IMG/VR virus record: IMGVR_UViG_3300048438_000153
Coordinates: 62,001 to 126,000 of that record
Direction: 5' to 3' (one strand)
Length of the DNA: 64,000 nt
In this document: in pieces, positions 17,253-52,047 of the stretch
Layout: every line of letters begins with the position of its first letter
Numbering within the stretch: position 1 is the first letter of the stretch
The notes under the pieces: model-generated
Database searches by the model: none
Seen by the model: only the letters and a program-made list of their open reading frames with translations
What the model was told of the DNA's origin: nothing
Translations under genes and position numbers: made by a program

Positions 17253-17314
17253 CCTCTGAACTCCTTATATGGTAGTCTTTACAGTGCAGTCGAACACATA
17301 AAAGGAGTACAGAT

Positions 17315-17716
17315 ATGGGCGCAGGAGTCTTATTACAGAAAGATGGGAGGGTTCTCCTCCTCAAGAGAAATAGAAGAAACGACCAATGGGGAGGATATTG
17401 GAACTGTCCTGGCGGAAGCTCAGAGATGGGAGAGTCTCGCTATCAGACCGCTCTCAGAGAAATGAATGAAGAGATAGGAGAGACGCCCCCTTTTAGGGTC
17501 TATGACCACATAGACACAAGAGGCTACACGCTCTTTCTAGCTGACGTGGACTACTTTTTCGCACCCACGCTCAACGAAGAACACTCTGAATGGAGGTGGT
17601 TCGAGAAATCAAGTGTTCTCTCTCTGCCTCTACACCCTAAAGATAGGAAGCCGATCAACCACCTGTTCAGGAAAGAAATAAAGCCCCCTCAGCCCATCGC
17701 GCCACCTAAGACTTAG
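17315..17716 (+). CDS. Nudix hydrolase
   Basis: Nudix box GGSSEMGESRYQTALREMNEEIG; also LNEEHSEWRWF. Confidence 0.92.
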   Translation: MGAGVLLQKDGRVLLLKRNRRNDQWGGYWNCPGGSSEMGESRYQTALREMNEEIGETPPFRVYDHIDTRGYTLFLADVDYFFAPTLNEEHSEWRWFEKSSVLSLPLHPKDRKPINHLFRKEIKPPQPIAPPKT

Positions 17717-20010
17717 TAGGCGTAAGAGGCATTCTTTCCGAACACGTTATCATCTAGAACCTCTTCGATCTCACCGTAGTTCTCCTCATACCAATCGAGG
17801 TGACCTGGCTCATCGACCACATCGTCTTTCGCGCCCTTGAAGTACGCGATAATGATAGGTGTGATGATCTCAAGAAGAGGGATAGAAGCAGTCGCCCAAA
17901 GCGCCTCAATGCCTGTCAGCTTAACTAAGACATAAGGCAAGAGGTAGTGCTCAAGAACCTCCACAAACGCCACCGCGATTGCCATGAGAACAACCTTGAA
18001 TACGCGCATAGGCCACTTGATATACCACTGTTTATCTGCATCTGCATCCCAACCGTATTTCTTAATGATCTCAAAGGCGTGTTTGATGATCTCGATGGGG
18101 TTGATCGTATGCCATGCTTTCTTGAGGGCTCTCTCAATAACTTTCTTACTGTGCTCCTGAGCAGCCTCCTCAACCAACTTCTTCTTAACTGATGGAGGTA
18201 CAGGGAGTTGGTTAGTGTCTCCCCACACATAACCCTCAATAAACTCAGGGCTCTTATCGCTAGGAGGATCGAGCTCATCTACATAGCCTCCGCGAGACAT
18301 GGCGCGCTCTTGGTTACGGAGCTTTGCACCCTGTTCAAACTCTTCAAAGTCTGCGTCAACCTCTGCCTCAAGCATCTTCTCCGCGACTTCAGGGGCAATC
18401 GCCTCAATCACGTCATCCATGAGGTCATCTACAGGCATCGTGAAAAGGTCGAGATGTCTGCGGAACTTGTCGATAGGGTTCACGACATACTTAAGAAGCA
18501 TCGCCTTAAGTGAGTCTTTCGCGCCCGCCTGATAGTACATAGCAGCGGTTCTGATCTGACCCTCGTAAGAGTTCTGACTCGCTCTTCTCTGCATAACCTG
18601 ACGGACAACCTGTCTCTTCAAATGTCTTTGATCCATTTCTAGCTCTCTTTCTGAATGGGGGATCGTTTTCTTATATGGCTTCATTAACGACTTATCGAGA
18701 ACCCTACTTGCTGAAGAGGTCTTTGAGCTTTTCTTACTTAAGCTAAGGGCATCTACTAGCTCTTGGTCTATTTCTTTCTCTCCGCTTAAGTAAGACCTCA
18801 TCTCATTACCTATCCCCACAGGGTCTTTCTCTAACTCTTCTAAAATCATGTCTTGAACGTCATAGAAGTGTTTCATCCGCGCCAACATTACGAAAGTAGG
18901 TAACTTATCTTCTGAACCGAGCTTCAGGGAGTTAAAGAAACTCTGAAACTTCTTCATCGGAGTATACGCCTCTGAGTGACCCTCATAACCTAACTGTTTT
19001 AGACCCTTATCTATCGAGGGTCTTGCGTTTTCTTGAAAGTCAGAATAAAGCCCACATATCTTTTCTCTCGCGTCTTTTGGAGAAAGAGATTTGTCTTCTA
19101 AGACAGACTGTAGCTTTTTACTGTACTCAGCCTCCACCCCTTCGGGAGTTTGATAGCCTGAGTATATATCTGAAGCTAGGCTGTCGAAGTTAGAGGCACT
19201 TTCTCTCCTTTTGCTTGAGAGCTGATGTAGTGCTTTCTTGTAGAAAACCATCCCCGCCCCAAAAGCAACTGCGGTAGACCCCACTGTAGCAACCACACCT
19301 GTAGCACCTAAAGCAGTTAAGATATTGGTGGTCGCTAACCCCGCAACCGCATTAACAGAAGCAACCCCCCCTTGAGCTCCAGCGCCCCAACCTAACAGGG
19401 GGAGAACCGTAGTCATAGTCCAATTAAGAGAGCAATTTCTAACCATCTGCCTGACTTCAGGATTCTCATCTTTTTTCTTTGACTTCAAGACCTTAAGAGA
19501 CAGAATATCTCCGAGCATCTTCGGAGTTCTTCTTAGAAACTCGTCGCCGATAGATGCGTCCCAAAACTGCTTCAACGCACCCCTCTGAAAACCATCAGTC
19601 TTAAAGCTACGACTAACCTCACTCGCTAAAGCTTTTAAGGACTCTTCAGAAGTCTCTTGGAGAGTCAGGTTGAGCTTGTTATCAGAAAAGACGTCTTCAG
19701 GTAGCCCGAGATTAGGCTTAGATAAGTTCTCAACAACCTGCTTGGAGATGTCTTTCTGAACCGCTTCGTTGAAGCCCTCAAATAACTTGAGAGCGAAATC
19801 ATATCTAGCTTTGTTTAGAGGATCAGCTCTTTCTTTCTCTGAAAGGTAAGACCATCCCTTCACTGTGGTGTACTGAACAATGTTTCCTGTAGGCTTGAAA
19901 CAGTCCTCCCAATCTTTAAACTTTTTGTCGATAAGGTCAAAGACTGTCTCGCTCTCTGATTTTTTAAGTGCTTTCAGGTATCTTGAAGCGACTCTTCTTG
20001 ATGCGCTCAT
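17713..20010 (-). CDS. hypothetical 765-aa protein with two hydrophobic (TM-like) regions and an RVASRYL leader
   Basis: A Gly/Ala-rich hydrophobic stretch at about aa 200-255 and a C-terminal hydrophobic cluster. Several RxA motifs. Confidence 0.6.
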   Translation of the reverse strand: MSASRRVASRYLKALKKSESETVFDLIDKKFKDWEDCFKPTGNIVQYTTVKGWSYLSEKERADPLNKARYDFALKLFEGFNEAVQKDISKQVVENLSKPNLGLPEDVFSDNKLNLTLQETSEESLKALASEVSRSFKTDGFQRGALKQFWDASIGDEFLRRTPKMLGDILSLKVLKSKKKDENPEVRQMVRNCSLNWTMTTVLPLLGWGAGAQGGVASVNAVAGLATTNILTALGATGVVATVGSTAVAFGAGMVFYKKALHQLSSKRRESASNFDSLASDIYSGYQTPEGVEAEYSKKLQSVLEDKSLSPKDAREKICGLYSDFQENARPSIDKGLKQLGYEGHSEAYTPMKKFQSFFNSLKLGSEDKLPTFVMLARMKHFYDVQDMILEELEKDPVGIGNEMRSYLSGEKEIDQELVDALSLSKKSSKTSSASRVLDKSLMKPYKKTIPHSERELEMDQRHLKRQVVRQVMQRRASQNSYEGQIRTAAMYYQAGAKDSLKAMLLKYVVNPIDKFRRHLDLFTMPVDDLMDDVIEAIAPEVAEKMLEAEVDADFEEFEQGAKLRNQERAMSRGGYVDELDPPSDKSPEFIEGYVWGDTNQLPVPPSVKKKLVEEAAQEHSKKVIERALKKAWHTINPIEIIKHAFEIIKKYGWDADADKQWYIKWPMRVFKVVLMAIAVAFVEVLEHYLLPYVLVKLTGIEALWATASIPLLEIITPIIIAYFKGAKDDVVDEPGHLDWYEENYGEIEEVLDDNVFGKNASYAY

Positions 20011-20080
20011 CTAACACCCCCCCCCTAAAGAAATGTCTTTTCTGATATAGTTAAAAACAGTTAAGTATAAAGGATCTAAC

Positions 20081-20401
20081 ATGAACGAATGGGTCGTATA
20101 TGTCATTCAGAGTCAGCAACCTCGAAAGACAGCAAGTGGAAAGCCTACTGAGGGATTCTTCTACGTTGGGTGTACTACAGATGTTAGCCGTAGACTGAGA
20201 CAACACAACGGAGAAATAAGAGGTGGGGGTAAATATACATCAAAGCATAGACCTTGGAAGCTCATGTGTACCTATGGCACATACGCTAACAGATCTGAAG
20301 CTATGAAAGCAGAGTTAGCTCTTAAGAAGAAGCGAGGTAAGGCTAGGTTATACTGGACAGAGGAACAGTCTAAATGGTGCAGAGGCAAGAACCTCATTTA
20401 A
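20081..20401 (+). CDS. GIY-YIG nuclease, SLX1-like
   Basis: VVYVI...FYVGCTTDVSRRLRQHNGEIRGGGKYTSKHRPW...AMKAE. Confidence 0.88.
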   Translation: MNEWVVYVIQSQQPRKTASGKPTEGFFYVGCTTDVSRRLRQHNGEIRGGGKYTSKHRPWKLMCTYGTYANRSEAMKAELALKKKRGKARLYWTEEQSKWCRGKNLI

Positions 20402-21556: not shown

Positions 21557-21955
21557 CTAGCGATCCTGATCTTTCTCTGAAGAGTCTAACCCACCAAGAG
21601 GGTAACTCATCCAAGAATACCTCTTTCTCGTGTCTAGGTAGTTGATGAACTTGTCACATTCCCAAGCCTCTTGCTCAAACCTGATGGCAAGGTAAGAGTC
21701 GCGGGTGAAACCCTTCTTTCTGACGATCGCGCTCCACAGATAGTCGAACAAGTAAATCAGTAGGAAGCCAACTACGAAAGTCTCAAGATACTGCTGAAAG
21801 TGAATCGTCTCATGCCTCTTGGTTTCCTCACTGAGCGTGCCCCTAGAAAACACGAAACAGAAGAGAGTGATCGCGCTGATTTCAATAGGGGCAAACTTTG
21901 ATAGCCATACGGGAATCTTAGAATTCTCGAAGAAAAACGGTTTTAAGCACTTCAT
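21557..21955 (-). CDS. HExxH zincin-like protein
   Basis: RHETIHFQQ...IRFEQEA. Confidence 0.65.
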   Translation of the reverse strand: MKCLKPFFFENSKIPVWLSKFAPIEISAITLFCFVFSRGTLSEETKRHETIHFQQYLETFVVGFLLIYLFDYLWSAIVRKKGFTRDSYLAIRFEQEAWECDKFINYLDTRKRYSWMSYPLGGLDSSEKDQDR

Positions 21956-22029
21956 AAAGTCACTTTCCTTTCTCTGATAGGTTTTCTATCTATCCCCATA
22001 AGAAAATAACCGACTAAGGGGCAGAGATC

Positions 22030-22518
22030 ATGAGCACACGAAGTAGAGAGTTTAGAGACACACACGCGACGATGGCTAAGCTATGTCAAGTCGCCATCCG
22101 AGAAGTCGTGAAAATTCTGAGTAAGACCCAAGACCCTCTCGTCAGAACCATCGCGATGAGAAAGTTTAAGAACGGCTACAGGCTTCCTAGAGATACCCGA
22201 AGAATCTCTTTAGAGTTTATTACTCTTGGGAGGATATACGCGGAGAAAGAACGGACTTATGGAGGAAGCCGAGTGCCTTTCAGCCGGGATAAGGTTCAAC
22301 TCACTCTTGGTCAGTCAGTGGAGGTCAACACTCTTCTCAGAAACGCGATTCTGTGGGTCTACAGGTTTTGGTCACCGACAGCAATGGCGAAGCTACTCTT
22401 AAGAGGCGGTGGCTTAGAGTTCGTGGATCTCCACATCAGAGAATACGCGCTCCTCAGAAACATCGGATTGATCCACCGCATGAGGTACAGAGAGCTGTTG
22501 AGGCTATTCTTCACCTGA
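22030..22518 (+). CDS. hypothetical basic protein
   Basis: ORF with an RBS and the late-type motif TAGGTTTTCTAT at 21978-21989. Confidence 0.6.
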   Translation: MSTRSREFRDTHATMAKLCQVAIREVVKILSKTQDPLVRTIAMRKFKNGYRLPRDTRRISLEFITLGRIYAEKERTYGGSRVPFSRDKVQLTLGQSVEVNTLLRNAILWVYRFWSPTAMAKLLLRGGGLEFVDLHIREYALLRNIGLIHRMRYRELLRLFFT

Positions 22519-22582
22519 ACACCATCTTTTTTCTGATATATAATGCGCGTAACCACAACCACGCGCAGAGAAAGGACAGACG

Positions 22583-24175
22583 ATGGAAAGTGAAAAGCTA
22601 CTCTCCACCATCGAGAAACTAAGAAAGATCAGGACGAAAGAAGATCTCAAAGCACCCCCCTCAACGATTCTCAAGACTACCCTTGATAACGGCGCTCCAC
22701 TCACTTTGAGGCAGTATCAGATACAGGGGATTCTCCATCTCCTCGCCATGCCCCGATTCGTTCTCGGTGATGATACAGGTCTAGGCAAGACCTTGCAGAC
22801 GATATCAGCTCTTTCTTACTTGTGGGAGAAGAAGCCCGAAATCCCCGCCCTCATCTGCACCACCAAGAGTGCCGTGGGGCAGTGGGAATCAGAGTTTGCT
22901 CGATTCACTAATGGTGTGAAGATATTCAAGTGTCTCGGCACAAAGAAAAAGAGAGCTAAGATTCACGAGGAGTTTCAGAGCTACTCAGACGGACCGAAAG
23001 CTCTTGTGATGGGCTACCGTACCGCTGTCATGGACTTCCAACACCTACAGCACATGAACGGTCATGTGATGATCTTTGATGAGGCTACCGCTTTTAAGAA
23101 TGACTCATCTCAAGTCCATCAGGTATGTAAGCACCTAGCGGGATCTGCGGAGCGCGTTTGGAGTCTTTCTGCGACTATCATCAAGAACAGGCTCATGGAG
23201 GCGTGGGCGATCTATAAGGTCACTGTCCCTCACCTCTTCACGACTAAGACTCACTTTATGAGAGAATACTGCATCACCCGCGATCAGACCCTCCCTGGCG
23301 GTAGGCGACGCATTAAGATCGTCGTAGGCCACAGAAAGAGAGACATCGAGGCTTTTCGAGAGGTCATCGACCCCTATTTCATTGGGCGTCCCAAGCACGA
23401 AGTGGCTCAGGAGCTACCCCCTCTCACGACTAAGACAATCCCATGCCCCCTCTCGAAAGCTCAGAAAGCGAAATATGAGGAGGCGCTACAGGGACTCTTA
23501 GAGGTCATCGACCCCGAAACAGGTGAGGTGATAGAAAGAGAAGTGACGAAGCTCACAGCAGTCACCATCTGTCAGCAAATAGTCAATCACCCCTCTCTCG
23601 TTAACTGTGATGGAGACAGTGGGAAGCTCGACACTCTGATCGACCTCCTAGAGAATGAGTTGGACGGCGAGAAAGTAATCGTGTTCTCGCGCTTCAGGTC
23701 GATGGTTGATATTCTTGAAGCTGAGCTAGAGGGCAGAAAGATCAAGACCTGTCGAATCACAGGGGCGGAGAACGGCGATCAGCGCGTGGCGAGTCAGAAA
23801 GCATTTCAAGACCCTGAGAATGAGACGAGAGTGTGTCTCATCACAATGGCCGCCGCTGAGGGTGTCAACTTACAGCTTGCAAAGGCTGTTGTGTTCTACG
23901 ACACCCCTTGGAGCGCGGGTGACTACCTTCAGATTATTGGTCGCATGATCCGTATCGGGTCTATCCACGATAGGGTCTTTTCCTACCACATCTGCGCCCC
24001 CAAGACGATTGATGATCGCGTGATGAAAACACTAGGGGTCAAGATGAACCTCATCGAGTCTGTGCTCGGAAAGAGACTTAAGTCTGAGACAGATGGAGAG
24101 TCCGTTGTAGAGATGGGACAATCGGAGGTAGCCGACCTCTTTGATGGTCTTTTGGAGGACGCTAGAAGCCTGTAG
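22583..24175 (+). CDS. SNF2-family SF2 helicase/ATPase
   Basis: Motifs LGDDTGLGKT (I), IFDEA (II), SAT (III), EGVNLQ and QIIGRMIRIG (VI). Confidence 0.93.
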   Translation: MESEKLLSTIEKLRKIRTKEDLKAPPSTILKTTLDNGAPLTLRQYQIQGILHLLAMPRFVLGDDTGLGKTLQTISALSYLWEKKPEIPALICTTKSAVGQWESEFARFTNGVKIFKCLGTKKKRAKIHEEFQSYSDGPKALVMGYRTAVMDFQHLQHMNGHVMIFDEATAFKNDSSQVHQVCKHLAGSAERVWSLSATIIKNRLMEAWAIYKVTVPHLFTTKTHFMREYCITRDQTLPGGRRRIKIVVGHRKRDIEAFREVIDPYFIGRPKHEVAQELPPLTTKTIPCPLSKAQKAKYEEALQGLLEVIDPETGEVIEREVTKLTAVTICQQIVNHPSLVNCDGDSGKLDTLIDLLENELDGEKVIVFSRFRSMVDILEAELEGRKIKTCRITGAENGDQRVASQKAFQDPENETRVCLITMAAAEGVNLQLAKAVVFYDTPWSAGDYLQIIGRMIRIGSIHDRVFSYHICAPKTIDDRVMKTLGVKMNLIESVLGKRLKSETDGESVVEMGQSEVADLFDGLLEDARSL

Positions 24176-24247
24176 AAAAACTGCTCTGACCTCCGCTTAT
24201 TCTGATATGGGTAAGACATACTTACCACAGAGATGAAAGGAGAGGTC

Positions 24248-24985
24248 ATGGCGGTCTGCAAGAAGTGTCACGGACACGGTTATGTCCAAGTGGACGAGGG
24301 GCATTATGGGATGCCTCAAGCCGTCCCTTGTTCATGCGTGCTTAAGAGAGCCCTGAGCGTCCAAGCGAGAAAGGCTTGGGGAGGGCTCGAAATCGTACCT
24401 GTTAAGAGAAGCAGTTTACTCAAAGGAAAGATTCGCGAGAACATCGTAGTCACGGCGAACAAGGCTGATCTGATGATCCACCTCAGATCAGCTCTCGCAC
24501 ACCACGCCCGACCTGAAGAGTTCGTAAAAGTAGTTTCTGACGCAACTCTTATTTCTGCTTGGCTCTCAAACCTCGCGCGCTCTGACAAGGATGTGATCGA
24601 CCCCGACTACATCCGTGAGCTGAGAGTGGCGAGCTTAGAAGACTTGGCTGAGTCACCTACTCTCCTCATCATTCGACTTGGCGTTAAGACAGCTAGAAAT
24701 AGCGCGATGCCTGAAGTACTCGCTGAGACGATTGAGCTGAGACAACACTTAGGTAAGCCAACTTGGGTTGTGGAAGAAACAGATAAGCCCTTAGAAGAAG
24801 GTCATATTTCATGGTCTAGGGCTGTGGATGACGCGCTTGATGGTTGGGAGCAAGTACCTCTCATGGGTACAGCTAAAGCAACAAAGCCTATTCAGAGAAA
24901 GGGTGGAGGACTTACTGTTCAGGACGTAAGCTCCAACACCGCTCAAGGACTCCCTCAAGCCCGACATAAGACGATGAAACTATGA
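24248..24985 (+). CDS. DnaC/IstB-like helicase-loader homologue (Zn finger + degenerate ATPase)
   Basis: CKKCHGHG...PCSC Zn finger, LLIIRLG at the Walker-B-like position, IELRQHLGKPTWV. Directly upstream of DnaB. No canonical Walker A seen. Confidence 0.55.
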   Translation: MAVCKKCHGHGYVQVDEGHYGMPQAVPCSCVLKRALSVQARKAWGGLEIVPVKRSSLLKGKIRENIVVTANKADLMIHLRSALAHHARPEEFVKVVSDATLISAWLSNLARSDKDVIDPDYIRELRVASLEDLAESPTLLIIRLGVKTARNSAMPEVLAETIELRQHLGKPTWVVEETDKPLEEGHISWSRAVDDALDGWEQVPLMGTAKATKPIQRKGGGLTVQDVSSNTAQGLPQARHKTMKL

Positions 24986-26493
24986 AGATTCTTAGAAGCA
25001 TATTACCTGACCCCCGCATTGGCGACGACGCTAAAGCGATGCTCCAAAACTACTCTGCGCTCAGGGAGTCTATCTTAAGGTTCGATCTCCCAACTGACGT
25101 GACGATCTATGAGTACATCAAAGACTTCGTTTCTCAGCACTCTCACCTACCTGTGCAGAACACCGCCATTCAGTTTTTCGACTCAAATAATCAATACGAT
25201 GAAGCTGACCGAATCCGTTCCCTCGCCTCTGTCGATCCCGCTTATCGTGGAGACTTCATCTTCTTAATTGAGAAGCAAGTAGAGGACGCGAGGGTTATTT
25301 CCCTGAGTGAGACAATGGCTCAGGTGAAAGAAATCACTCGAAATGGGATCGAGATCAAAGAGGGAAAGAAAAAGCGTATTCTTAAGGGAGCGCGTGACGC
25401 GGGGAAGTACATATTTCAGCAACTACATGGAGTGATGACACCTACGTTCGGATCGCGCATTGGAGGCGAGGCGCTCGGTGATGGAGATGAGTTTTGGGAG
25501 GAGTATCAGAAAGTAAAGGACACTAAAGTAGAAGTCTTACCAAAAACAGGACTTGAAGTAATCGACAACGCTCTCGGAGGCTTTAAGAGGAAAGAACTTT
25601 ACATCATCGCGGGCTTCACAGGACACATGAAGTCTAGGTCAGCACTTAATTGGGTCTACAATCAGAGCGTCTATGGAGGCACGAGCACGATCTATTTCTC
25701 TCTTGAAATGCACTACTCCCAATGTCGTAGGATGATCTATTGCTTTCACAGTATGCACCCTAAGTTCCGCGCTAAGAGAATGGCTCTCGACATCCAAAAG
25801 CACGCTAACCCTGATGTGGGACTCGACCCTATCAAGATGCGTGAAGCGAAGCTCAGTCAAGATGAAGAGGCTTTTCTGAAAGAGGTCGTTCAAGACCTGA
25901 AAGAGAACATGGAGAATGGCACTTACGGCTCGATCTTCTTTGAGGTCGCTGATCCTGACAGCCTCGATTTCACTGTCGAGGACATGAGGACTAAGGCAGA
26001 AGCCATCTCTCAGAAACACCCCATCAAATTGGTCGTAGTAGACCACGCTCTCTTAATGTCGAGTAGGCGGTGGGTCAACTCTACTACAGAGCGACTCAAT
26101 GAGGTGATACGCGACCTCAAGAAAACCGCTATGGGCTTTAATCGTGGTCAGGGTGTCCCTATCCTGTGCCTCTTTCAGATTAACCGCGAGGGCTTCAAAG
26201 CGGCTGAAAAGAACAACGGCACTTACAACCTCACTCACCTTTCCTACGCTAACGAAGCTGAACGCTCTGCTGACGTGGTAATCGCGGGTTGGTTCGGTGA
26301 TGATATGCGTGAGAAGAGCATGATTAAGTATCAGTGTCTGAAGTCTCGCGACCAAGCTCCTTTCGAGGCTTTCGAGGCTCAGGTGTCTTGGCCTGTTGGT
26401 CGTATTCTGAACACACCTCTAAACTTTAATATGGGGTCGTCTTCCAAGTCAGGCGGTAAAGCTAAAGCAGACCCTTTAGATGACGTCGTGTAA
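24982..26493 (+). CDS. dnaB: DnaB-like replicative helicase
   Basis: TGLEVIDNALGGF, IIAGFTGHMKS (Walker A), FSLEM, VVVDH, QINREG, ERSAD, KSR. Confidence 0.9.
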   Translation: MKILRSILPDPRIGDDAKAMLQNYSALRESILRFDLPTDVTIYEYIKDFVSQHSHLPVQNTAIQFFDSNNQYDEADRIRSLASVDPAYRGDFIFLIEKQVEDARVISLSETMAQVKEITRNGIEIKEGKKKRILKGARDAGKYIFQQLHGVMTPTFGSRIGGEALGDGDEFWEEYQKVKDTKVEVLPKTGLEVIDNALGGFKRKELYIIAGFTGHMKSRSALNWVYNQSVYGGTSTIYFSLEMHYSQCRRMIYCFHSMHPKFRAKRMALDIQKHANPDVGLDPIKMREAKLSQDEEAFLKEVVQDLKENMENGTYGSIFFEVADPDSLDFTVEDMRTKAEAISQKHPIKLVVVDHALLMSSRRWVNSTTERLNEVIRDLKKTAMGFNRGQGVPILCLFQINREGFKAAEKNNGTYNLTHLSYANEAERSADVVIAGWFGDDMREKSMIKYQCLKSRDQAPFEAFEAQVSWPVGRILNTPLNFNMGSSSKSGGKAKADPLDDVV

Positions 26494-26857: not shown

Positions 26858-27012
26858 ACCCTGAAGAGTGTATGCTCGTCGCTTCTTTCTTAACAATCAT
26901 CGCGACACAACCCAAACGCCCCACTGAGTATGACCCACTCAAGAAAGTGGGTGTGTTCTGTCTTTATGCGCTTATTTTGTTCTACCTCAATCAAATACTA
27001 TATGGAGTGTAA
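26854..27012 (+). CDS. small membrane protein (52 aa, below the track cutoff)
   Basis: MNPEECMLVASFLTIIATQPKRPTEYDPLKKVGVFCLYALILFYLNQILYGV*, with ATGA overlap with the upstream stop. Confidence 0.5.
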   Translation: MNPEECMLVASFLTIIATQPKRPTEYDPLKKVGVFCLYALILFYLNQILYGV

Positions 27013-27405: not shown

Positions 27406-27951
27406 GTGAGCAAGCGAGCCGAGCGCATCAAGGAAGAAATCTCAATCTTAAAGGTTCTTTCCGACTACGGCTACGATGTCTATGAGGGAGGGGGAGAACA
27501 GCAGTTCCGCTGTGATCTTCATGGAGACGGATCAGATAATGCTCCGAGCGCGAGAGCCTACCCTGAGTCTAACTCTTTCTTCTGCTTCGCCTGTGGTAGA
27601 CCTAGAGACAGCATCGCTCTCGTCATGGAGAAAGAGGGCGCGGAGTTCTCAAAAGCCTGTTCTCTAATAGAAAAAAAATACGGCCTTTCTGAATGGGTCT
27701 ACAAGAAGAAAGAAGACCCATTCGAGCGAGCTGAGAGAGAGGCTGAAGCGCCCTTAGACAATCGCGCTGAGATGGAGAGGAGAGTTGGGTCTAAACTCTT
27801 TTTTCTCACTAGAGAACGAACCCTCGATTTAAGTACCATGCTAAGACTTTGGGAAGGGTATGATTTGATCTGTTCGCTAGATCATCAATCACCCGATCAT
27901 TGGAGGAAACTCCTCCGACAAATACCCCAAAGGCAAGACGATGAGTGCTGA
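27406..27951 (+). CDS. CHC2 zinc-finger protein (primase N-terminal domain, no TOPRIM)
   Basis: FRCDLHGDGSDNAPS...FFCFACG...DSIALVMEKEGAEF. Confidence 0.85.
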   Translation: MSKRAERIKEEISILKVLSDYGYDVYEGGGEQQFRCDLHGDGSDNAPSARAYPESNSFFCFACGRPRDSIALVMEKEGAEFSKACSLIEKKYGLSEWVYKKKEDPFERAEREAEAPLDNRAEMERRVGSKLFFLTRERTLDLSTMLRLWEGYDLICSLDHQSPDHWRKLLRQIPQRQDDEC

Positions 27952-34124: not shown

Positions 34125-34127
34125 GAT

Positions 34128-34186
34128 CTCTCCTTATTCTGATATGTATCTCCACCTATCACCCTCCCATAAAAGAATAAGGAGAG
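34128..34186. promoter_or_regulatory. 13-bp inverted repeat formed by the RBSs of two divergent genes
   Basis: ctctccttattct (34128-34140) and agaataaggagag (34174-34186). Confidence 0.65.
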
Positions 34187-37959: not shown

Positions 37960-38027
37960 GGTCTGAGCTCCCTTTCTTTGATATGGTTAAGCACACATTA
38001 AAGCCAAGATAAAGAGGATACAGAAAC

Positions 38028-38606: not shown

Positions 38607-38608
38607 AT

Positions 38609-40354: not shown

Positions 40355-40355
40355 T

Positions 40356-41066: not shown

Positions 41067-41069
41067 GAA

Positions 41070-41246
41070 ATGAAGAACCAAATATTTAACGAGGTCTGCT
41101 TAGAAACCATGTCTCGAATGAGCGATAGCTCAATAGACAAAAACATGAATAACATCGGCAAGACCTTCTGTGAGCCGATATGGGTTTGGAGTAAGGGCGA
41201 AGCCCCTGAGCCCAAGTGGAACCAAGACACTTATTTCGGAGTATGA
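41070..41246 (+). pseudogene. 58-aa chimeric relic: beta-class MTase-like N-terminus fused to an SPPY-paralogue C-terminus
   Basis: MKNQIFNEVCLETMSRMSDSSID|KNMNNIGKTFCEPIWVWSKGEAPEPKWNQDTYFGV*. The second half nearly duplicates the end of 39161-40354. Confidence 0.75.
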
Positions 41247-41249
41247 AGC

Positions 41250-42401: not shown

Positions 42402-42537
42402 GACTCCTGACCCTGAGCCTAAGTGGACACAAGACAACTTCTTCGGAGTTTAAGAAATGCAGAACCAAATCTTCAATGAGGAGTACTTCAAGATGTCGAA
42501 AGTAAGACTAGAAAACACTCAGGAGTATCTTTTCTAA
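42402..42537 (+). pseudogene. two relics: an orphan MTase tail (PDPEPKWTQDNFFGV*) and an internally deleted MTase mini-ORF at 42457-42537
   Basis: The mini-ORF MQNQIFNEEYFKMSKVRLENTQEYLF* joins an N-terminus like that at 41070 to a beta-MTase-type C-terminal EEY..S..RL helix. Confidence 0.65.
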
Positions 42538-43238
42538 TGCACCACATACAAGAAAGAAACTGCGCTGAAGCGTGGATTAAAGCCACTCAAGACATCCTCT
42601 CTAAAGGAGAGAATATGGGTGGCCTATACGAGATCCTCAATATGGGGATAGAAATCACTTCCTCTGAGGTATGTCCTGTCTTTGACAGCCATTTCAGAGA
42701 CGTCTTCGGAGACGAGAGAATAGACTATGCTAAGTCTGTCACTTTCATCGAGCCTAAGCCCAACCCTCTCTTTCCCGATTTAAGAGAATACGAGCAGAAC
42801 AAGACGGGGAAATGGACAAATAGCTATTGGGGTCGGATGTTCTCTTGGAACGGCGGATTCAACCAAGTCGAACAGACGATTAAGAGACTGAAAGAGAACA
42901 AGCAAGCCAAGACCATCGTAATCGGAGTCTACGACCCTCAGACTGACGGAAAGAAAGTCATGGGAGGGATGCCCTGTCTGCTCACCATAGACCTCAAGCC
43001 TAGAGGCGGTAAACTTAACCTCACAGCTAACTTTAGGAGTCAGGCTGTCTCCAAGTCAGGGTATGCGGATTACATGGCTCTCGTAGAGTTCTGTGACTTC
43101 CTCTGCAAAGAGAGCGGGTGTCTCGACTTTGGGTTAGTGACTTCTTTCGCTCACTCATGTCATGTGAGGACTCAAAACGGAGAACTTAAGAAATCCAAGG
43201 AGCTGATGAGGAGATATCATGAAGAAATGGGTAGCTGA
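42537..43238 (+). CDS. thymidylate-synthase-fold pyrimidine-modifying enzyme (dCMP hydroxymethylase-like)
   Basis: YWGR, NQVEQTIKRL, MPC (catalytic Cys), FRSQAVSKSGYAD, HSCH. Confidence 0.8.
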   Translation: MHHIQERNCAEAWIKATQDILSKGENMGGLYEILNMGIEITSSEVCPVFDSHFRDVFGDERIDYAKSVTFIEPKPNPLFPDLREYEQNKTGKWTNSYWGRMFSWNGGFNQVEQTIKRLKENKQAKTIVIGVYDPQTDGKKVMGGMPCLLTIDLKPRGGKLNLTANFRSQAVSKSGYADYMALVEFCDFLCKESGCLDFGLVTSFAHSCHVRTQNGELKKSKELMRRYHEEMGS

Positions 43239-44130
43239 TTTTAAGAGTATTCTTTACTCCACTATAGAGGCTCTCCCCCCTGAAGTGAGTCTTTCTTTCT
43301 CGGGTGGCGTTGACTCCTCTATGCTTTTATTCGCTATGATTGATTTAGGCAGACCCCCTACAGAGCTCATCACATTCAAGATTGTAGGGGAATACTCTAA
43401 GGACTTAGATTTCGCTAGAAAGACCGCCCATCATTACGGCATCCCTTTGAGGGTTGCTCAGATCCCAAGTAACCCTCAAAAGAAAGACCTCGAAAGAGAG
43501 ATTAAAGAGATTCTTAGAGAAACGAGAGTTTCTCGGAGCATAGACACTCAGGTGTCCTATGCCTACTCCTACATGACCTCAATCACCTCAACTGACCATC
43601 TTGTTCTCGGGTTCTACGAGGACTTGTACTGCCTCAACAATAAGAAAAACTCTGTCATGTATAGCAATATGCTAAAGGGAAATCTCTCTGAGAAAGAGTT
43701 CGTTTCTTGGATCAATCAAGAAAGAGTCGAAATATATCAAGGCAAGGTTGCAGGGCGCAAAGCTCAGATTGACCACAACTATGTCGTGATCTCTAACTAC
43801 ATTGAGTCTAAGGGTATTCAGACTATCTGTCCCCTCAGAAATCAGGAGATGTTGGATCATTGTCTTAAGAAAGGGTTTGAAGATCTGACGTTCGATCTGA
43901 ATGGAAAGAGAAGGTCTAAGTGGTTCATCAAAGACATGATCTTTAAGAAGTATTTCGACCAACACAAAACCAACATATCTAACTTTCATACATCGGGAAA
44001 AGAAGGTGGGCTGAAAGGTCTGCATCAGAGGGTGCTTCTAACAGGATCACCATACAAAGACACAAGAGCAATTTACAATCAAATACTTAAAGACATTGAG
44101 TTTGAAGAGAGCGCGCATTTCCTATGCTAA
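43219..44130 (+). CDS. asparagine-synthetase-like PP-loop ATP pyrophosphatase/amidoligase (no glutaminase domain)
   Basis: SLSFSGGVDSS, DLDFARKTAHHYGI, CPLRN, SKWFIK. Confidence 0.8.
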   Translation: MKKWVADFKSILYSTIEALPPEVSLSFSGGVDSSMLLFAMIDLGRPPTELITFKIVGEYSKDLDFARKTAHHYGIPLRVAQIPSNPQKKDLEREIKEILRETRVSRSIDTQVSYAYSYMTSITSTDHLVLGFYEDLYCLNNKKNSVMYSNMLKGNLSEKEFVSWINQERVEIYQGKVAGRKAQIDHNYVVISNYIESKGIQTICPLRNQEMLDHCLKKGFEDLTFDLNGKRRSKWFIKDMIFKKYFDQHKTNISNFHTSGKEGGLKGLHQRVLLTGSPYKDTRAIYNQILKDIEFEESAHFLC

Positions 44131-44957
44131 ACCTACACACACCTGTCGAAACTTACCGCATAGAAAGCACTGAGGTAGACGTTAAGAGAGATGACCTTCA
44201 TAATGGAGATCTCGACCTCCCTCCTTGGGCAAAGCTAGAGGGGGTGCGCCAACTACTCCTCTCAGACTGCTTCGATAAAAGAAAGCCCATCGTACACCTA
44301 ACTATCAGAGGTTCATACACAGGGTGGGCTCTTTCTTATTTCGGGAGAGAATACGGGTACGACATCAAGATCGCCTATCCGAAAACCAAGTCTTACCCTC
44401 AAGAAATGCTCGATAAGATCACTCAATATGGAGGGGAACTTGTGCCTCTCCGACATAATATGGTGGCGGTTCTCTCAGCTCAGGTTAAGAAGATGGCTAA
44501 AGAGCGCGGGTGGCAAATGAGCCCCGACGCTTTCAACCACCCTGTCTATGTAAAGTCTTGGAAAGAAAGATCTGCTTCTTTCTTTCAAGAGAACGACTAT
44601 CAGACCCTCGTCATTCAAGGGGGGAGTGGAGTTACGAGTGTTGGACTCATTCAGAGTTTTCTCGGTGTAGATTACATTGCGGGTCAGATGTTTGAGCCCA
44701 CATACGAGGGAAAGAAAGTAATCATCATCTCCACCTCAAGTGTAAAGACCGTGAAGTCTGCGCTCGTATCAAATATGGGGAGTGTGCCTTCGTGTGTAGA
44801 AATCTACAAATCTGAACATGACTTCTATGACGAGATTCCTACTCATGCGACACCGTTCCCCTGTAACCGTCTGTGGGACAAGAAAGCGTGGGTTTGGATG
44901 ACTCAGAATGTGGGTGAGTTGAAGGATAGAACTCTCTTTTGGAACTTGGGGGCATAA
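44124..44957 (+). CDS. PLP-dependent fold-type II enzyme (D-cysteine desulfhydrase/ACC deaminase-like)
   Basis: TPVE...VKRDDL...WAK (PLP Lys), GGSGVT phosphate loop, WDKKAW, LFWNLG. Confidence 0.8.
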   Translation: MLNLHTPVETYRIESTEVDVKRDDLHNGDLDLPPWAKLEGVRQLLLSDCFDKRKPIVHLTIRGSYTGWALSYFGREYGYDIKIAYPKTKSYPQEMLDKITQYGGELVPLRHNMVAVLSAQVKKMAKERGWQMSPDAFNHPVYVKSWKERSASFFQENDYQTLVIQGGSGVTSVGLIQSFLGVDYIAGQMFEPTYEGKKVIIISTSSVKTVKSALVSNMGSVPSCVEIYKSEHDFYDEIPTHATPFPCNRLWDKKAWVWMTQNVGELKDRTLFWNLGA

Positions 44958-44960
44958 GCT

Positions 44961-46184
44961 GTGTTTTTTGAGTACGAGAAAGAACTGCCTAAAACAGATC
45001 TCTCTGACTATAGTCTCCTCAAGAATGGGCAAATCTCTATACCTTCCTATGTATGGCGCGAGATTAAAAACAGCTTCGATAAGAAAGAGGTGATCGAGCA
45101 CATCTCTCAACTTATACAAGATCACAACCTCCCCTACCCGAGTAGGACATACACAAAAGCTGTACTCGACAGGGACTTCAGAAAGCTCAAGAGCGAGTCA
45201 TGTGGTGTGAAAGAGGGATCTTGGGAGTGCTTGAGGACGATCCCTAATGTCACTCTTAAATACCTTAATCGTCAGTGCTACATACAGGCTAGTCAACATG
45301 GTCTAAAAGTCTCGGATCAGCAGACGCATCTCTCTCGCATGAAATGCGCTCACTTCGAGCACAAGAGTCCGTACAGAGAATGGACTCGGCAAGGGTGCAA
45401 GTCGAAGGTCAGATACGTTCTAAGAGTGTTGTGGAGTCTATCAGAAGGAGACGCCCTTAAGAACGGTGTGTGCGAGAAGCAACTGAGAGACTGCTTGAGG
45501 TTGGGCAACTACATGGCGAGTCAGTTCAAGCCCTCATGCGCTAAGACCCTGTATGATTTCTTTCAGGCTAAGAGAGTCTTAGACCTAAGCTCAGGGTGGG
45601 GTGACAGGCTCGTAGGTTTTCTTGCGAGTGGGGCTGAGAGCTATGTCGGGATAGACCCTAACTCTGAACTCCACGAACCCTATCAGAAGATCGCTGACTT
45701 CTGTGACACAGGGAAGGAAACACGATTCATCTGTGATCCCGCAGAGGACGCAGACTTAACGGGTGTTGAGGTGGACTTCGTATTTACGAGCCCCCCTTAC
45801 TTTGACGTTGAAAAGTACAGTGAAGAAGACACTCAGAGTTGGAAACGATATAAGTCGAAAGACCTATGGCTGAATAACTTCTTTCTCCCATCGCTCACTA
45901 AGGCTTGGGAGGCTCTTTCTGAGGGAGGGAGGATAGCCATCAACATCGCAGACAAGGGTCACTCAAGAGAAGATGTGGGCGAGGACATCTGTAGCCCCAT
46001 GTTAAGACATATGGAGTCTCTAGGCGCTACCTATGAGGGGATTATCGGGTATAGGATGAACAAGAGGCCGGGTGACAGAATGGGCGCGGTTGGAGGCGCG
46101 GTTTTCTGTGAGCCGATATGGGTTTGGAGTAAGGGTGAAGCCCCTGATCCCAAGTGGACTCAAGACACCTATTTCGGAGTTTAA
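44961..46184 (+). CDS. DNA amino-methyltransferase, paralogue 3
   Basis: VLDLSSGWGDR and FTSPPYF; GTG start. Confidence 0.85.
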   Translation: MFFEYEKELPKTDLSDYSLLKNGQISIPSYVWREIKNSFDKKEVIEHISQLIQDHNLPYPSRTYTKAVLDRDFRKLKSESCGVKEGSWECLRTIPNVTLKYLNRQCYIQASQHGLKVSDQQTHLSRMKCAHFEHKSPYREWTRQGCKSKVRYVLRVLWSLSEGDALKNGVCEKQLRDCLRLGNYMASQFKPSCAKTLYDFFQAKRVLDLSSGWGDRLVGFLASGAESYVGIDPNSELHEPYQKIADFCDTGKETRFICDPAEDADLTGVEVDFVFTSPPYFDVEKYSEEDTQSWKRYKSKDLWLNNFFLPSLTKAWEALSEGGRIAINIADKGHSREDVGEDICSPMLRHMESLGATYEGIIGYRMNKRPGDRMGAVGGAVFCEPIWVWSKGEAPDPKWTQDTYFGV

Positions 46185-46185
46185 G

Positions 46186-47364
46186 ATGTTTTTCGATTAC
46201 GAAAAAGAGATCACATCTCTCGATGAGATCAAGTATATTAAGAACGGTTATTTCCACATCCTCCCTAGTGAGTGGGAGATGCTTAGAAAGTCTTTTACCA
46301 AGGAAGAAATAAAAGACCATATCGCGCCCATCCTGAGTTCATTACCGTACCCCTATTTCGAGTATTCAGAGAAAGAGCTGAGGAGAGATTTCTCTAAGCT
46401 GAAATCACTCTCGAATAAACTCAAGCAAGGGGAATGGGTAGCTACAAGACAAGCAGCAGAAAGAGACACACTCTTTCTCGGTCAGAGTATCTATATGGAC
46501 TGCTACTACACAGGGAAAGGAATATCTGATCAGTACACTCAAGAGGCGCGCTTTAAATGCTCTTATAGAGCTGTCGGTAACTCCCCTTACGACGAGTGGG
46601 TCAGTGCGGACAAGAAGAACTCTTTCTTAAGATGTTTCTTCGGCATCTCAGAGAGGGACATCTACGAAAGAGGAGGAGTCAACAAGCAGACACTCAGGCG
46701 CGCTCTAAAGATGCACACATACACAGCGAGTCAGTTCAAGGCTGAAGCCTCTAAAACCCTGTATGATTTCTTTCAGGCTAAGAGAGTCTTAGACTTCAGT
46801 GCAGGATGGGGTGACAGGCTCGTGGGTTTCCTCGCTAGCGGAGCAGATAGTTATGTCGGGATAGACCCTAACTCTAAGCTACATGAACCCTATCAGAAGA
46901 TCGTCGATTTCTGTAACACAGGGAAGGAAACACGATTCATCTGTGCTCCCGCAGAGGACGCAGACTTAACAGGTGTTGAGGTGGACTTCGTGTTTACAAG
47001 TCCTCCCTATTTTGACATAGAGAGATACAGTGACGAAGACACTCAGAGTTGGAAACGATACCCTGAAATAGACTCTTGGGTCGAGGGCTTCTTCCTCCCC
47101 ACTCTAAGCAAGTGTTGGAGTGTTCTTTCTGAGGGCGGGAGAATACTTGTCAACATCGCCGATAAGAAGGGCAACGACATCTGTAGCCCCATGTTAAGAC
47201 ATATGGAGTCTCTAGGCGCTACCTATGAGGGTGTTATAGGCTACCGTATGTCAGAAAGAGGAGGGCAAAAGACCACCGTACCGAGCTGTGAGCCGATATG
47301 GGTTTGGTCTAAAGGCGACGCGCCCGAACCTAAGTGGACTCAAGACACCTATTTCGGAGTTTAA
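46186..47364 (+). CDS. DNA amino-methyltransferase, paralogue 4
   Basis: True start MFFDYEKE at 46186; VLDFSAGWGDR and FTSPPYF. Confidence 0.85.
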   Translation: MFFDYEKEITSLDEIKYIKNGYFHILPSEWEMLRKSFTKEEIKDHIAPILSSLPYPYFEYSEKELRRDFSKLKSLSNKLKQGEWVATRQAAERDTLFLGQSIYMDCYYTGKGISDQYTQEARFKCSYRAVGNSPYDEWVSADKKNSFLRCFFGISERDIYERGGVNKQTLRRALKMHTYTASQFKAEASKTLYDFFQAKRVLDFSAGWGDRLVGFLASGADSYVGIDPNSKLHEPYQKIVDFCNTGKETRFICAPAEDADLTGVEVDFVFTSPPYFDIERYSDEDTQSWKRYPEIDSWVEGFFLPTLSKCWSVLSEGGRILVNIADKKGNDICSPMLRHMESLGATYEGVIGYRMSERGGQKTTVPSCEPIWVWSKGDAPEPKWTQDTYFGV

Positions 47365-51095: not shown

Positions 51096-51112
51096 AGCTT
51101 TAGTTGTCTTTC

Positions 51113-51880
51113 TTAGTGGTTGTTGATGTAGGCAGATGCAACGCGCTCAATCATTGCATACCTCTCTCCGCTTGGGCTCTTCTTATGTTTGGGCTTACGC
51201 GATCTACCCTTTGCCACATCTTTACTTCTGTTGTGGTGCTTACCCTTACCTGATGACCCCACGCCCCCATCAAACATACCCTGAGTGCTCGGGTCGCGGA
51301 ACTTAGGTATGGTGTTAGGGTCTTTTTTCTTTTTCTTCTTAGAAGCCGTCTTAAGACTCGCCATCACCTGACGTCCGTCTTCGGTGATCTCACGATCAAG
51401 CATGACCGCAGGCCGACGAACAAGGTAGTTAGGCCATTTCTCAAACCACTTAGAATAAAACTCGTCTTCCCCTACCTCTCTAACAGTCTTATCCGGGTTC
51501 GGGATGTTCGGGTCAGCGACGTGAACGATGTAGTTACCGCGCTCTCCTGTGACATCAAAGATCAGGCTCGCGTGACTCCAATCACGACCCTCGGGATTCC
51601 ACGCAATTAAGACAGGCTTTCCCTGATCAGTCCATGCTTTCACCTGAGAAAGAGTAGCAGGTGTGGTGAGCGTAGCCCGACACCCAAAGTACTGAGCGCA
51701 AGCTAAGACTTCTTCCCATCGAGCACCCTTCATAGGTTGCGCGCCGATGACCTTGTTTACCTGATCTTCGTTGCAGTCAACACCGAGCGCGTTGAGAGCC
51801 ATACACGTCGAGGTAGAGACACAGCTAAACTGAGATCTCTGTCTGATGGGCTTTACGTTAGCCTTCGCTGTTCTTCTCAT
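51113..51880 (-). CDS. C39-like cysteine peptidase with MRRTA leader
   Basis: RQRSQFSC (Q..C), WSHASL (H), VADPN (D). Start placed at 51880 from the RBS and the TAGATCGTCTAT motif at 51918-51929. Confidence 0.8.
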   Translation of the reverse strand: MRRTAKANVKPIRQRSQFSCVSTSTCMALNALGVDCNEDQVNKVIGAQPMKGARWEEVLACAQYFGCRATLTTPATLSQVKAWTDQGKPVLIAWNPEGRDWSHASLIFDVTGERGNYIVHVADPNIPNPDKTVREVGEDEFYSKWFEKWPNYLVRRPAVMLDREITEDGRQVMASLKTASKKKKKKDPNTIPKFRDPSTQGMFDGGVGSSGKGKHHNRSKDVAKGRSRKPKHKKSPSGERYAMIERVASAYINNH

Positions 51881-51954
51881 GGGAAGCACCTTTCTTAGTC
51901 TTTCCTCTAACCCTCTTATAGACGATCTACCAAGGGACGACATTCTCCGCATAT

Positions 51955-51987
51955 TGTGCGGAGAATAGACCTCTTAATCTCCGCACA
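51955..51987. promoter_or_regulatory. 10-bp inverted repeat in a divergent intergenic region
   Basis: tgtgcggaga ... tctccgcaca. Confidence 0.5.
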
Positions 51988-52047
51988 CTCGAAAAGCATC
52001 TTGCCTCTCCCTAAATACGATATGTACCCCTCACAAGGAGGTAAGTC

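What the first reader, a model, noticed from the sequence alone, without database searches (positions are those of the whole stretch)
17253..52047. Second motif (YGATAT) before DNA-metabolism genes, set face-to-face with the late motif
TGATAT occurs at 20043, 22534, 24203, 34140 and 37979, CGATAT at 52018, and variants at 17265 and 26998. These lie about 25-46 nt upstream of plus-strand Nudix, SLX1-like, SNF2, loader/DnaB, PolA and modification-operon starts. In four divergent gaps of about 60-70 bp (17252/17315, 20010/20081, 34124/34190, 37959/38028) the plus-strand motif lies next to the minus gene's RBS, and the minus-strand late motif lies next to the plus gene's RBS. The two 5' leaders would therefore overlap in antisense. 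Inference: a built-in early/late mutual-interference switch repeated across the genome.
Basis: partly seen in the sequence, partly recalled or inferred. Interest (0 to 1): 0.6.

Follow-up and report, generated by a model that had tools for sequence, protein, structure and literature searches.

The report
Interleaved promoter pairs in marine jumbo phage
An uncultured 275-kb seawater phage puts a short promoter-like signal (TCTGATAT) in front of its DNA-replication genes and squeezes it head-on against a second, near-identical signal for neighbouring genes inside about 65 bases, which looks more like a conserved space-saving layout than a proven early/late switch.

Summary
Every coordinate is right, and I found a fifth divergent gap (21956-22029). 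The bare 6-mer is unspecific: 55 of its 61 window copies fall outside the claimed upstream positions. The real motif is longer, a pyrimidine tract followed by CTGATAT and a purine. TCTGATAT occurs 18 times in the 275-kb genome, 10 of them correctly oriented 15-75 nt before a start codon (0.5 expected). It precedes DNA-metabolism genes genome-wide. Relatives with 55% PolA identity carry a cognate motif (TCATATAA) at the same position.

The face-to-face layout is also real. Seven or eight gaps of 60-83 nt in this genome show it, and so do many in a 376-kb relative. Orthologues keep their promoter class and the compact module.

- The two cores lie 13-23 nt apart, so with a -10-like geometry the leaders overlap by about -2 to +8 nt.
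- The layout follows a general packing rule. Each promoter sits about 45-55 nt from its own ATG and abuts the neighbour's stop codon or RBS.
- In the relative, same-class pairs are packed as often as mixed pairs.
- At PolA, the relatives are back-to-back.

Two polymerases cannot occupy one module at once, but a regulatory switch is unproven. No RNA data exist.

The parts
17264..17272 (+). M-type motif, weak variant (CTTATATGG), before the Nudix gene. It differs by one base from both the M and the L consensus.
17296..17303 (-). L-type motif (TTTTATGT) for the 536-aa gene 15642-17252. It abuts the Nudix RBS.
17255..17313 (.). Inverted repeat with 17-nt arms, 88% complementary. The arms are the two promoters plus the opposite RBS.
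20041..20050 (+). M motif TCTGATATAG before the GIY-YIG gene (20081-20401)
20065..20072 (-). L motif (CTTTATAC) for the 765-aa gene 17713-20010. Its complement overlaps the GIY-YIG RBS.
21973..21982 (+). M motif variant TCTGATAGGT before the 162-aa gene 22030-22518.
21996..22003 (-). L-like motif (TCTTATGG) for the 132-aa protease-like gene 21557-21955
22532..22541 (+). M motif TCTGATATAT before SNF2 (22583-24175), in a tandem context. It is the only site with a full TGAACA-17-TATAAT match.
24201..24210 (+). M motif TCTGATATGG before the 245-aa gene and DnaB operon (24248-26493), followed by a small hairpin
26996..27005 (+). Weak variant (ACTATATGGA) before the 27049 gene and the primase-like 27406-27951
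34138..34147 (+). M motif TCTGATATGT before PolA (34190-36868)
34167..34174 (-). L motif (TTTTATGG) for the 124-aa gene 33750-34124
34128..34186 (.). Inverted repeat with 19-nt arms, 89% complementary. The M and L arms differ only at GA versus TT.
37977..37986 (+). M motif TTTGATATGG before the 192-aa gene that heads the DNA-modification operon (38028-47364)
38007..38014 (-). L motif (CTTTATCT) for the 364-aa gene 36865-37959
52016..52025 (+). M variant TACGATATGT before genes 52048-53182. This gap is long (95-167 nt, depending on the minus gene's start), so the pair is not interleaved.

Best explanation
YGATAT is the core of a promoter class, here called M, with consensus pyrimidine tract + CTGATAT + purine. 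M drives the replication, recombination and nucleotide-metabolism genes of an uncultured marine jumbo phage (275 kb). A second, far commoner class, L (TA-N5/6-yTTTAT), drives most other genes, including baseplate and tail-fibre genes. The two cores differ by only one or two bases (TGATAT against TTTAT). M has the form TG-n-TAT of an extended -10 element. In relatives it reads TCATATAA, often extending to a canonical TATAAT (as at PolA).

Inferred: both classes are read by the host's multisubunit RNA polymerase. M is read with little or no help and L through a phage factor. The phage encodes a sigma-70 region-4-like protein, a NusG/KOW-like neighbour and multi-HTH proteins, and no recognisable polymerase of its own.

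The face-to-face layout is a general packing rule of this phage clade. Every promoter sits about 45-55 nt from its own start codon and butts against whatever lies upstream. In tandem pairs that is the neighbour's stop codon. In divergent pairs it is the neighbour's RBS and ATG, whose complement (CTCCTT) supplies the pyrimidine tract. Two promoters therefore share one 60-75-bp stretch and cannot both hold a polymerase at once.

Shown: the motifs, their enrichment, their gene classes, the geometry and the conservation. Inferred: promoter function, the polymerase used, the timing and any interference.
For: Motif enrichment and orientation.

Gene class:
- In the window: Nudix, GIY-YIG, SNF2, DnaB and PolA.
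- Elsewhere in the genome: DprA-like, RecD/Dda-like helicase, UvsX-like, exonuclease, SbcC-like and dCMP deaminase.

L motif: EM recovers about 70 sites, with TA at a fixed offset from TTTAT. It lies before baseplate genes and the 1832-aa tail-fibre gene.

Packing rule:
- The L 8-mer starts 1-7 nt after the upstream stop codon in 15 of 36 tandem sites. In compact divergent gaps the motif starts 7-31 nt from the opposite ATG.
- Divergent gap sizes are bimodal: 12 at 49-87 nt, none at 88-119, 13 at 120 or more.

Conservation:
- Relatives carry a CTCATATAAT-type motif about 45 nt before PolA.
- G3 has 25 divergent gaps of 46-98 nt, most of them with the same end-to-end layout.
- Orthologues of GIY-YIG (M), and of the 765-, 364- and 124-aa genes (L), keep their class and a compact module, with different partners.
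- In the four-genome alignment of the GIY-YIG module, only the two cores and the RBS are conserved.

No phage polymerase was found: PF00562, PF00940, PF00623 and the DFDGD motif are all absent. Sigma region-4-like, NusG/KOW-like and HTH proteins are present.
Against: - No transcript data of any kind exist. Only DNA runs from seawater hold the phage.
- The T at -7, a hallmark of sigma-70 -10 elements, is not conserved in M sites.
- Full -35/-10 promoters are not enriched: 13 found against 20.6 in shuffles.
- The contig is 88% complete, and a 4204-aa ORF has no family or PDB match, so a cryptic phage polymerase is not excluded.
- In this genome every clearly typed compact gap but one is an M/L pair. 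That would also fit a switch.
- GIY-YIG is 83% identical between genomes whose PolA is 56% identical. Its conserved module may partly reflect recent transfer.
Confidence: 0.6

Rival explanations
1. One reading: each 60-75-bp module is a purpose-built early/late toggle. The M and L polymerase complexes, or their antisense leaders, shut each other off, so switching class at one module turns a replication gene off and a neighbouring late gene on.
For: - The two cores lie 13-23 nt apart, so the footprints must overlap.
- In this genome the typed compact gaps are M/L: 60, 62, 65, 68, 70 and 74 nt.
- Two modules are 17-19-nt inverted repeats whose arms differ only at the class-defining bases.
- The layout recurs and is conserved in relatives.
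- Face-to-face promoters do interfere in P2/186-type phages (PMC7498355).
Against: - In G3, compact gaps hold L/L pairs as often as L/M pairs.
- Relatives have 102-189 nt at PolA, and the two promoters read there point apart.
- The same tight packing holds for tandem promoters against stop codons.
- Leader overlap is only about -2 to +8 nt under a -10-like geometry.
- Inner spacing varies over a full helical turn.
- Strand and class are confounded in this genome: M is mostly on +, L mostly on -. Any divergent junction therefore tends to be M/L.
Confidence: 0.2
2. The motifs are start-site-spanning promoters of a phage-encoded, non-canonical RNA polymerase, like the phiKZ late promoters T(-3)ATG(+1). 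Transcripts would then start inside TATG and the leaders would overlap by 15-27 nt.
For: - Many M sites and some L sites read TATG.
- The small hairpin after the motif at 24203 would then sit at the very 5' end of the RNA.
- A 4204-aa ORF remains unexplained.
- The phiKZ precedent is described in PMC7598289.
Against: - No beta or beta' family hit and no DFDGD motif in any called protein.
- The base after TAT varies: G, A, C or T.
- NusG-like and sigma region-4-like genes point to use of the host polymerase.
Confidence: 0.1
3. YGATAT is not a polymerase-recognition element. It is instead the binding site of a phage regulator (an activator or repressor box, like the T4 MotA box) or an RNA-level signal in the leader.
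For: - The motif lies at a fixed distance from start codons and lacks a conserved T at -7.
- The phage encodes several multi-HTH proteins.
Against: - No second conserved element lies 10-20 nt downstream that could serve as the real -10 in tandem contexts.
- The cognate motif in relatives often reads as a canonical TATAAT, as at PolA.
- M and L differ by one or two bases, as expected for variants of one recognition element.
Confidence: 0.1

Closest known systems
Temporal promoter classes of lytic phages that reprogram host RNA polymerase (T4 early, middle and late; phiEco32/7-11 phage sigma)
   Same: - Short class-specific motifs near -10.
- A fixed position upstream of functionally coherent gene sets.
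- Phage-encoded sigma-like or HTH factors.
- No -35 needed for the later classes (own knowledge; PMC8948821 for 7-11).
   Different: - The sequences differ from the T4 MotA box and from TATAAATA.
- The factors are not identified.
- The two classes here differ by only one or two bases.
- Timing is untested.
[quoted passage not shown]
   Same: Two promoters point at each other, and the pair is used as a switch with transcriptional interference (PMC7498355, citing Callen et al. 2004).
   Different: - There is one pair per genome, 40-60 bp apart, in temperate phages, with long transcript overlap and dedicated repressors.
- Here there are seven or more pairs in a lytic-type jumbo phage, with cores 13-23 nt apart, probably little transcript overlap and no operator sites identified.
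phi29 early A2b/A2c and late A3 divergent promoter region
   Same: Early and late promoters of opposite direction share one intergenic region and are switched together (PMC3100819).
   Different: - In phi29 the promoters lie apart in a larger region rather than interleaved (own knowledge).
- They are switched by proteins p4 and p6 bending the DNA.
- It is a single locus.
Bidirectional bacterial promoters arising from -10 symmetry (Warman et al., bioRxiv 10.1101/2020.01.31.928960; PMC12825309)
   Same: Two oppositely oriented promoters share the same short DNA, and one polymerase binding event excludes the other.
   Different: There the two -10 elements coincide on opposite strands, and the transcripts diverge from starts about 18 bp apart (the distance is own knowledge). 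Here the cores are separate, each lies downstream of the other's start region, and each overlaps the neighbour's RBS.
phiKZ late promoters T(-3)ATG(+1)
   Same: A TATG core is present in many sites (PMC7598289).
   Different: No phiKZ-type polymerase genes were found. The base after TAT is not fixed. An upstream pyrimidine tract and the TG/TT discriminator are conserved here.

Membership tests
Phage class-specific promoter motif | Orientation-specific enrichment at a fixed distance upstream of start codons | tested here: met
   TCTGATAT lies before 10 genes against 0.5 expected. The 5' end of the 8-mer lies 32-63 nt from the ATG, and 18 sites fall in oriented windows against 3.1 expected.
Phage class-specific promoter motif | Association with a functional gene class | tested here: met
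   M lies before Nudix, GIY-YIG, SNF2, DnaB, PolA, DprA-like, RecD/Dda-like, UvsX-like, exonuclease, SbcC-like and dCMP deaminase genes. L is less clean: baseplate and tail-fibre genes, but also the RNR small subunit.
Phage class-specific promoter motif | Conservation of motif and position in related genomes | tested here: met
   A cognate motif, TCATATAA(T), lies about 45 nt before PolA and GIY-YIG in relatives.
Phage class-specific promoter motif | Transcripts start at the motif and follow a class-specific time course | not testable with these tools
   No RNA run holds the phage. Read laying gave DNA contigs only.
Sigma-70 extended -10 promoter (TGnTATAAT) | TG one base upstream of the hexamer | tested here: met
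   Most M sites read TGATAT. The variants at 17265, 26998 and 52018 lack the TG.
Sigma-70 extended -10 promoter (TGnTATAAT) | Hexamer with conserved A at -11 and T at -7 | tested here: not met
   TAT is conserved, but the sixth base is T, A, G or C across sites. Full -35/-10 matches are not enriched: 13 against 20.6.
Face-to-face interfering promoter pair (P2/186 type) | Two promoters oriented towards each other | tested here: met
   In eight gaps each motif lies at the end far from its own gene.
Face-to-face interfering promoter pair (P2/186 type) | Start sites 40-60 bp apart, giving overlapping transcripts | tested here: not met
   The inner distance between cores is 13-23 nt in seven of the eight gaps and 47 nt in the 83-nt gap. 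Start sites themselves were not mapped.
Face-to-face interfering promoter pair (P2/186 type) | Measured interference between the two promoters | not testable with these tools
   This needs reporter or transcript data.
Symmetric bidirectional promoter (Warman type) | The -10 elements coincide on opposite strands | tested here: not met
   The cores are separate, 13-23 nt apart in this genome and 15-18 nt in the orthologous GIY-YIG modules.
phiKZ-type late promoter | Phage-encoded multisubunit RNA polymerase | tested here: not met
   PF00562 and PF00623 give no match, and no called protein has DFDGD. Caveats: the contig is 88% complete, and very divergent subunits could be missed.

The most novel reading that the evidence does not exclude
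The roughly 65-bp modules are self-contained temporal toggles. Two near-identical promoters on opposite strands differ only at one or two class-defining bases, and each is built on the complement of the other's ribosome-binding site. They compete for one polymerase-sized stretch of DNA. The change of specificity factor during infection would then flip many gene pairs at once without any repressor. The design recurs at least seven times in this genome and is kept across a clade of marine jumbo phages.
Probability: 0.15. Interest if true: 0.65.

Novelty: new variant of a known kind. Interest (0 to 1): 0.4.

Why it matters
- It gives a usable promoter grammar for an uncultured clade of marine jumbo phages: three motif classes, with two of them one or two bases apart. 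This helps annotation and host or strategy inference.
- It shows a systematic layout in which a promoter and the neighbour's ribosome-binding site are written on opposite strands of the same bases.
- If the modules also act as competitive toggles, they would be a repressor-free way to couple switching off replication genes with switching on late genes.
- They would also be compact parts for synthetic biology.

Tried and rejected
- **Close relatives.** A megablast of 22 kb against GenBank phages found nothing. The nearest record by PolA is an uncultured 485-kb phage at 44% identity.
- **Motif discovery.** EM seeded with TCTGATAT drifted to the ribosome-binding site (AGAAAGGAG) and was discarded. 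I used k-mer statistics and curated patterns instead.
- **An apparent GGTATAA motif.** It turned out to be partly the complement of L sites and partly the long contig-end motif.
- **Polymerase search.** PF00562, PF00940, PF00623, PF04542 and the DFDGD motif were all negative. The PF00940 control also found nothing, so that result is uninformative.
- **The 4204-aa ORF.** No Pfam, PHROG or PDB match.
- **The sigma-like 189-aa protein.** No PDB sequence match.
- **RNA evidence.** Only DNA runs from seawater hold the phage. Laying four runs gave contigs only, with one variant (21992 A>C) in the spacer between the cores of one module. That is too little for population footprinting.
- **Sigma-70 consensus scan.** Not enriched.
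- **Terminator scan.** Twice the shuffle count, but only weak hits, mostly inside genes and none at the convergent junctions.
- **Rejected idea: compact gaps are reserved for mixed-class pairs.** This is true in this genome but not in relative G3.


Full report
**Context**

The window is bases 62001-126000 of a 275,102-bp IMG/VR virus record that CheckV rates 88% complete. The DNA occurs only in seawater and marine metagenomes, and no RNA run holds it. There is no close GenBank relative. By PolA, the nearest GenBank record is an uncultured 485-kb phage at 44% identity. IMG/VR holds relatives with 54-60% PolA identity. I fetched two of them whole: G3 (375,691 bp, rated 100% complete) and G2 (290,179 bp, 93%). 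Gene calls are my own crude caller: 266 genes, 94% coding.

**Check of the observation**

All eight coordinates are correct. The gene labels hold for Nudix, GIY-YIG, SNF2, DnaB and PolA. The 'loader' has no family hit.

The 'modification operon' (38784-47364) holds:
- four paralogous N6/N4 methylases;
- a Dam-like methylase;
- a thymidylate-synthase-like protein;
- an asparagine-synthase-like protein;
- a PLP-dependent enzyme.

The 6-mer alone is only mildly over-represented, at 61 copies against 41 +/- 6 in shuffles. Fifty-five of those copies lie outside the claimed upstream positions. The true motif is longer: a pyrimidine tract, then CTGATAT, then a purine. Genome-wide, TCTGATAT occurs 18 times. 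Ten of these lie in the right orientation 15-75 nt before a start codon, against 0.5 expected. A curated pattern gives 18 sites against 3.1 expected, before 17 genes, 13 of them on the + strand.

Outside the window the same motif precedes DprA-like, RecD/Dda-like helicase, UvsX-like, exonuclease, SbcC-like and dCMP-deaminase genes. The link with DNA metabolism is therefore genome-wide.

**The other motifs**

EM on all upstream regions recovers the 'late' motif, L, as TA-N5/6-yTTTAT. It has about 70 sites. By pattern it precedes 53 genes, 45 of them on the minus strand, with 57 sites against 12.6 expected. L precedes baseplate-wedge and baseplate-hub genes and a tail-fibre gene. It also precedes the ribonucleotide-reductase small subunit, so 'late' is a loose label.

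A third motif is about 45 nt long, with core GGTATTGGTGAGGTAACAGG. It has 10 copies before small genes at 5.8-8.7 kb, 24.2 kb and 266.8-274.2 kb, that is, at both contig ends. This may be the real early class, so M could be early or middle. I cannot tell which.

**Geometry**

Five gaps in the window have the + motif at the left end and the minus L motif at the right end: 17253-17314, 20011-20080, 21956-22029, 34125-34189 and 37960-38027. Each motif starts 8-32 nt from the opposite ATG, and so on or next to the opposite RBS. Its 3' end lies 30-54 nt from its own ATG. Three more such gaps lie elsewhere in the genome.

Two modules are inverted repeats with 17-19-nt arms. In them the M and L promoters differ at only two bases, and the RBS AAGGAG read backwards supplies the pyrimidine tract CTCCTT.

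The inner distance between the two 8-mers is 13-23 nt in seven of the eight gaps, and 47 nt in the eighth. If the motifs work like -10 elements, the two start sites lie almost opposite each other and the leaders overlap by about -2 to +8 nt. An overlap of 15-27 nt requires the start to lie inside TATG, as at phiKZ late promoters (PMC7598289). What certainly overlaps is the DNA that a polymerase would cover.

**Who reads the motifs**

No phage polymerase was found:
- PF00562 and PF00623 gave no match.
- No called protein carries DFDGD.
- PF00940 also gave no match, but its control failed, so that result is uninformative.

The phage does encode a 189-aa sigma-70 region-4-like protein. It belongs to a viral family of such proteins. 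Next to it lies a weak NusG/KOW-like protein, and two multi-HTH proteins lie elsewhere in the genome. This fits use of the host polymerase. The caveats are the 12% of the genome that may be missing and a 4204-aa ORF with no match anywhere.

M has the TG-n-TAT form of an extended -10 element. In relatives it reads TCATATAA, often extending to a canonical TATAAT, as at PolA. However, the T at -7 is not conserved, and full -35/-10 promoters are not enriched.

**Comparative evidence**

Relatives carry the cognate motif about 45 nt before PolA. There the gap is 102-189 nt. In the relatives where I could read an L-type motif for the minus gene (L025, L015), the two promoters point apart.

Elsewhere in G3, 25 of 56 divergent gaps measure 46-98 nt. 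Most of them have a promoter-like motif at each far end, on the opposite RBS. Orthologues keep their class and a compact module even with other partners:
- GIY-YIG (M) in a 57-nt gap;
- the 765-aa orthologue (L) in a 79-nt gap;
- the 364-aa orthologue (L) in a 72-nt gap;
- the 124-aa orthologue (L) in a 59-nt gap;
- Nudix in 64-nt (G3) and 88-nt (G2) gaps.

An alignment of the GIY-YIG module from four genomes conserves only two blocks. One is the M core. The other is the RBS together with the complement of the L core. The spacer between them is free and 14-18 nt long. One caveat applies: GIY-YIG is 83% identical where PolA is 56%, so the cassette may be mobile.

**Switch or packing**

Divergent gaps in this genome are bimodal: 12 at 49-87 nt, none at 88-119 and 13 at 120 or more. 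The lower mode equals the length of one promoter plus one leader.

Tandem promoters are packed just as tightly. In 15 of 36 tandem L sites the 8-mer starts 1-7 nt after the upstream stop codon. Convergent genes overlap by 4 nt in 10 of 27 pairs.

In this genome the typed compact gaps are M/L pairs (60-74 nt), but strand and class are confounded. In G3, compact gaps hold L/L pairs (5 of 9) as often as L/M pairs (5 of 7).

I therefore read the layout as a conserved packing rule. Its physical consequence is mutually exclusive occupancy. A regulatory use of that exclusion is possible but unproven.

**Comparison with known systems**

- Face-to-face promoters with interference are known in P2/186-type phages, 40-60 bp apart (PMC7498355).
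- An early/late divergent switch is known in phi29 (PMC3100819).
- Symmetric bidirectional promoters, in which one binding event excludes the other, are known in bacteria (bioRxiv 10.1101/2020.01.31.928960; PMC12825309).

This case differs in three ways. It recurs many times in a lytic-type jumbo phage. The cores are 13-23 nt apart. Each promoter is written on the neighbour's RBS.

**Verdict**

This is a new variant of a known kind, of moderate interest.

Noticed in passing
Outside the window: genome 5.8-8.7 kb, 24.2 kb and 266.8-274.2 kb (loci L011, L012, L013): A conserved element of about 45 nt (core GGTATTGGTGAGGTAACAGG, then ATTGGGTAACTAAGAGTAATCAC) has 10 copies, 9 on the minus strand, 49-98 nt before small ORFs at both contig ends. 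It contains GGTA-type units about 11 nt apart and has no sigma-70-like hexamers. It may be the true early promoter or operator class.
   Followed up: partly
window 38784-47364: A probable DNA-modification cluster: four paralogous N6/N4 methylases (39161, 41250, 44961, 46186), a Dam-like methylase, and thymidylate-synthase-like, asparagine-synthase-like and PLP-dependent enzymes. This suggests hypermodified bases, which would bear on how the T-rich promoters are read. The paralogues carry TCTGATAGGG on the minus strand inside coding sequence, which gives false motif hits.
   Followed up: partly
whole genome, e.g. window 17713-17716: Convergent genes overlap by exactly 4 nt (shared stop codons) in 10 of 27 pairs here and in many pairs in G3. 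That leaves no room for terminators, so single + strand genes such as Nudix and GIY-YIG sit antisense inside runs of minus-strand genes. Read-through antisense transcription at 3' ends may matter more than any 5' overlap.
   Followed up: partly
window 20018-20026: A run of nine C (nine G on the minus strand) forms the Shine-Dalgarno region of the 765-aa gene 17713-20010. A homopolymer tract at an RBS is a possible slippage site.
   Followed up: no
window 20081-20401, against G3 275870-276181 and G2 229810-230016: The GIY-YIG protein is 83% and 78% identical to its counterparts in relatives whose PolA is 54-56% identical. It may be a mobile homing-endonuclease cassette carrying its own promoter module.
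   Followed up: partly
Outside the window: genome 41034-53648 (L009), minus strand: A 4204-aa ORF has no Pfam, PHROG or PDB sequence match. It is a candidate for a virion or injected giant protein, and a hidden polymerase is not excluded.
   Followed up: partly
Outside the window: genome about 239.6-240.7 kb (L033:1201-2299, minus strand): Two adjacent genes encode a 189-aa sigma-70 region-4-like protein (a viral family) and a 178-aa protein with weak NusG NGN and KOW matches. Multi-HTH proteins lie at L034:1171-1653 and L036:1450-2253. These are candidate class-specificity factors.
   Followed up: partly
window 22544-22567 and 24209-24225: Small hairpins lie directly downstream of the M motif in the two tandem contexts (SNF2 and DnaB operon leaders). 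They may be 5'-terminal stabilising stem-loops, and if so they constrain where transcription starts.
   Followed up: no
window 28695-29336: A ClpP-like or head-maturation-protease gene lies at the end of the + strand replication run (SNF2, DnaB, primase-like). This shows that the strand runs are not purely one functional class.
   Followed up: no
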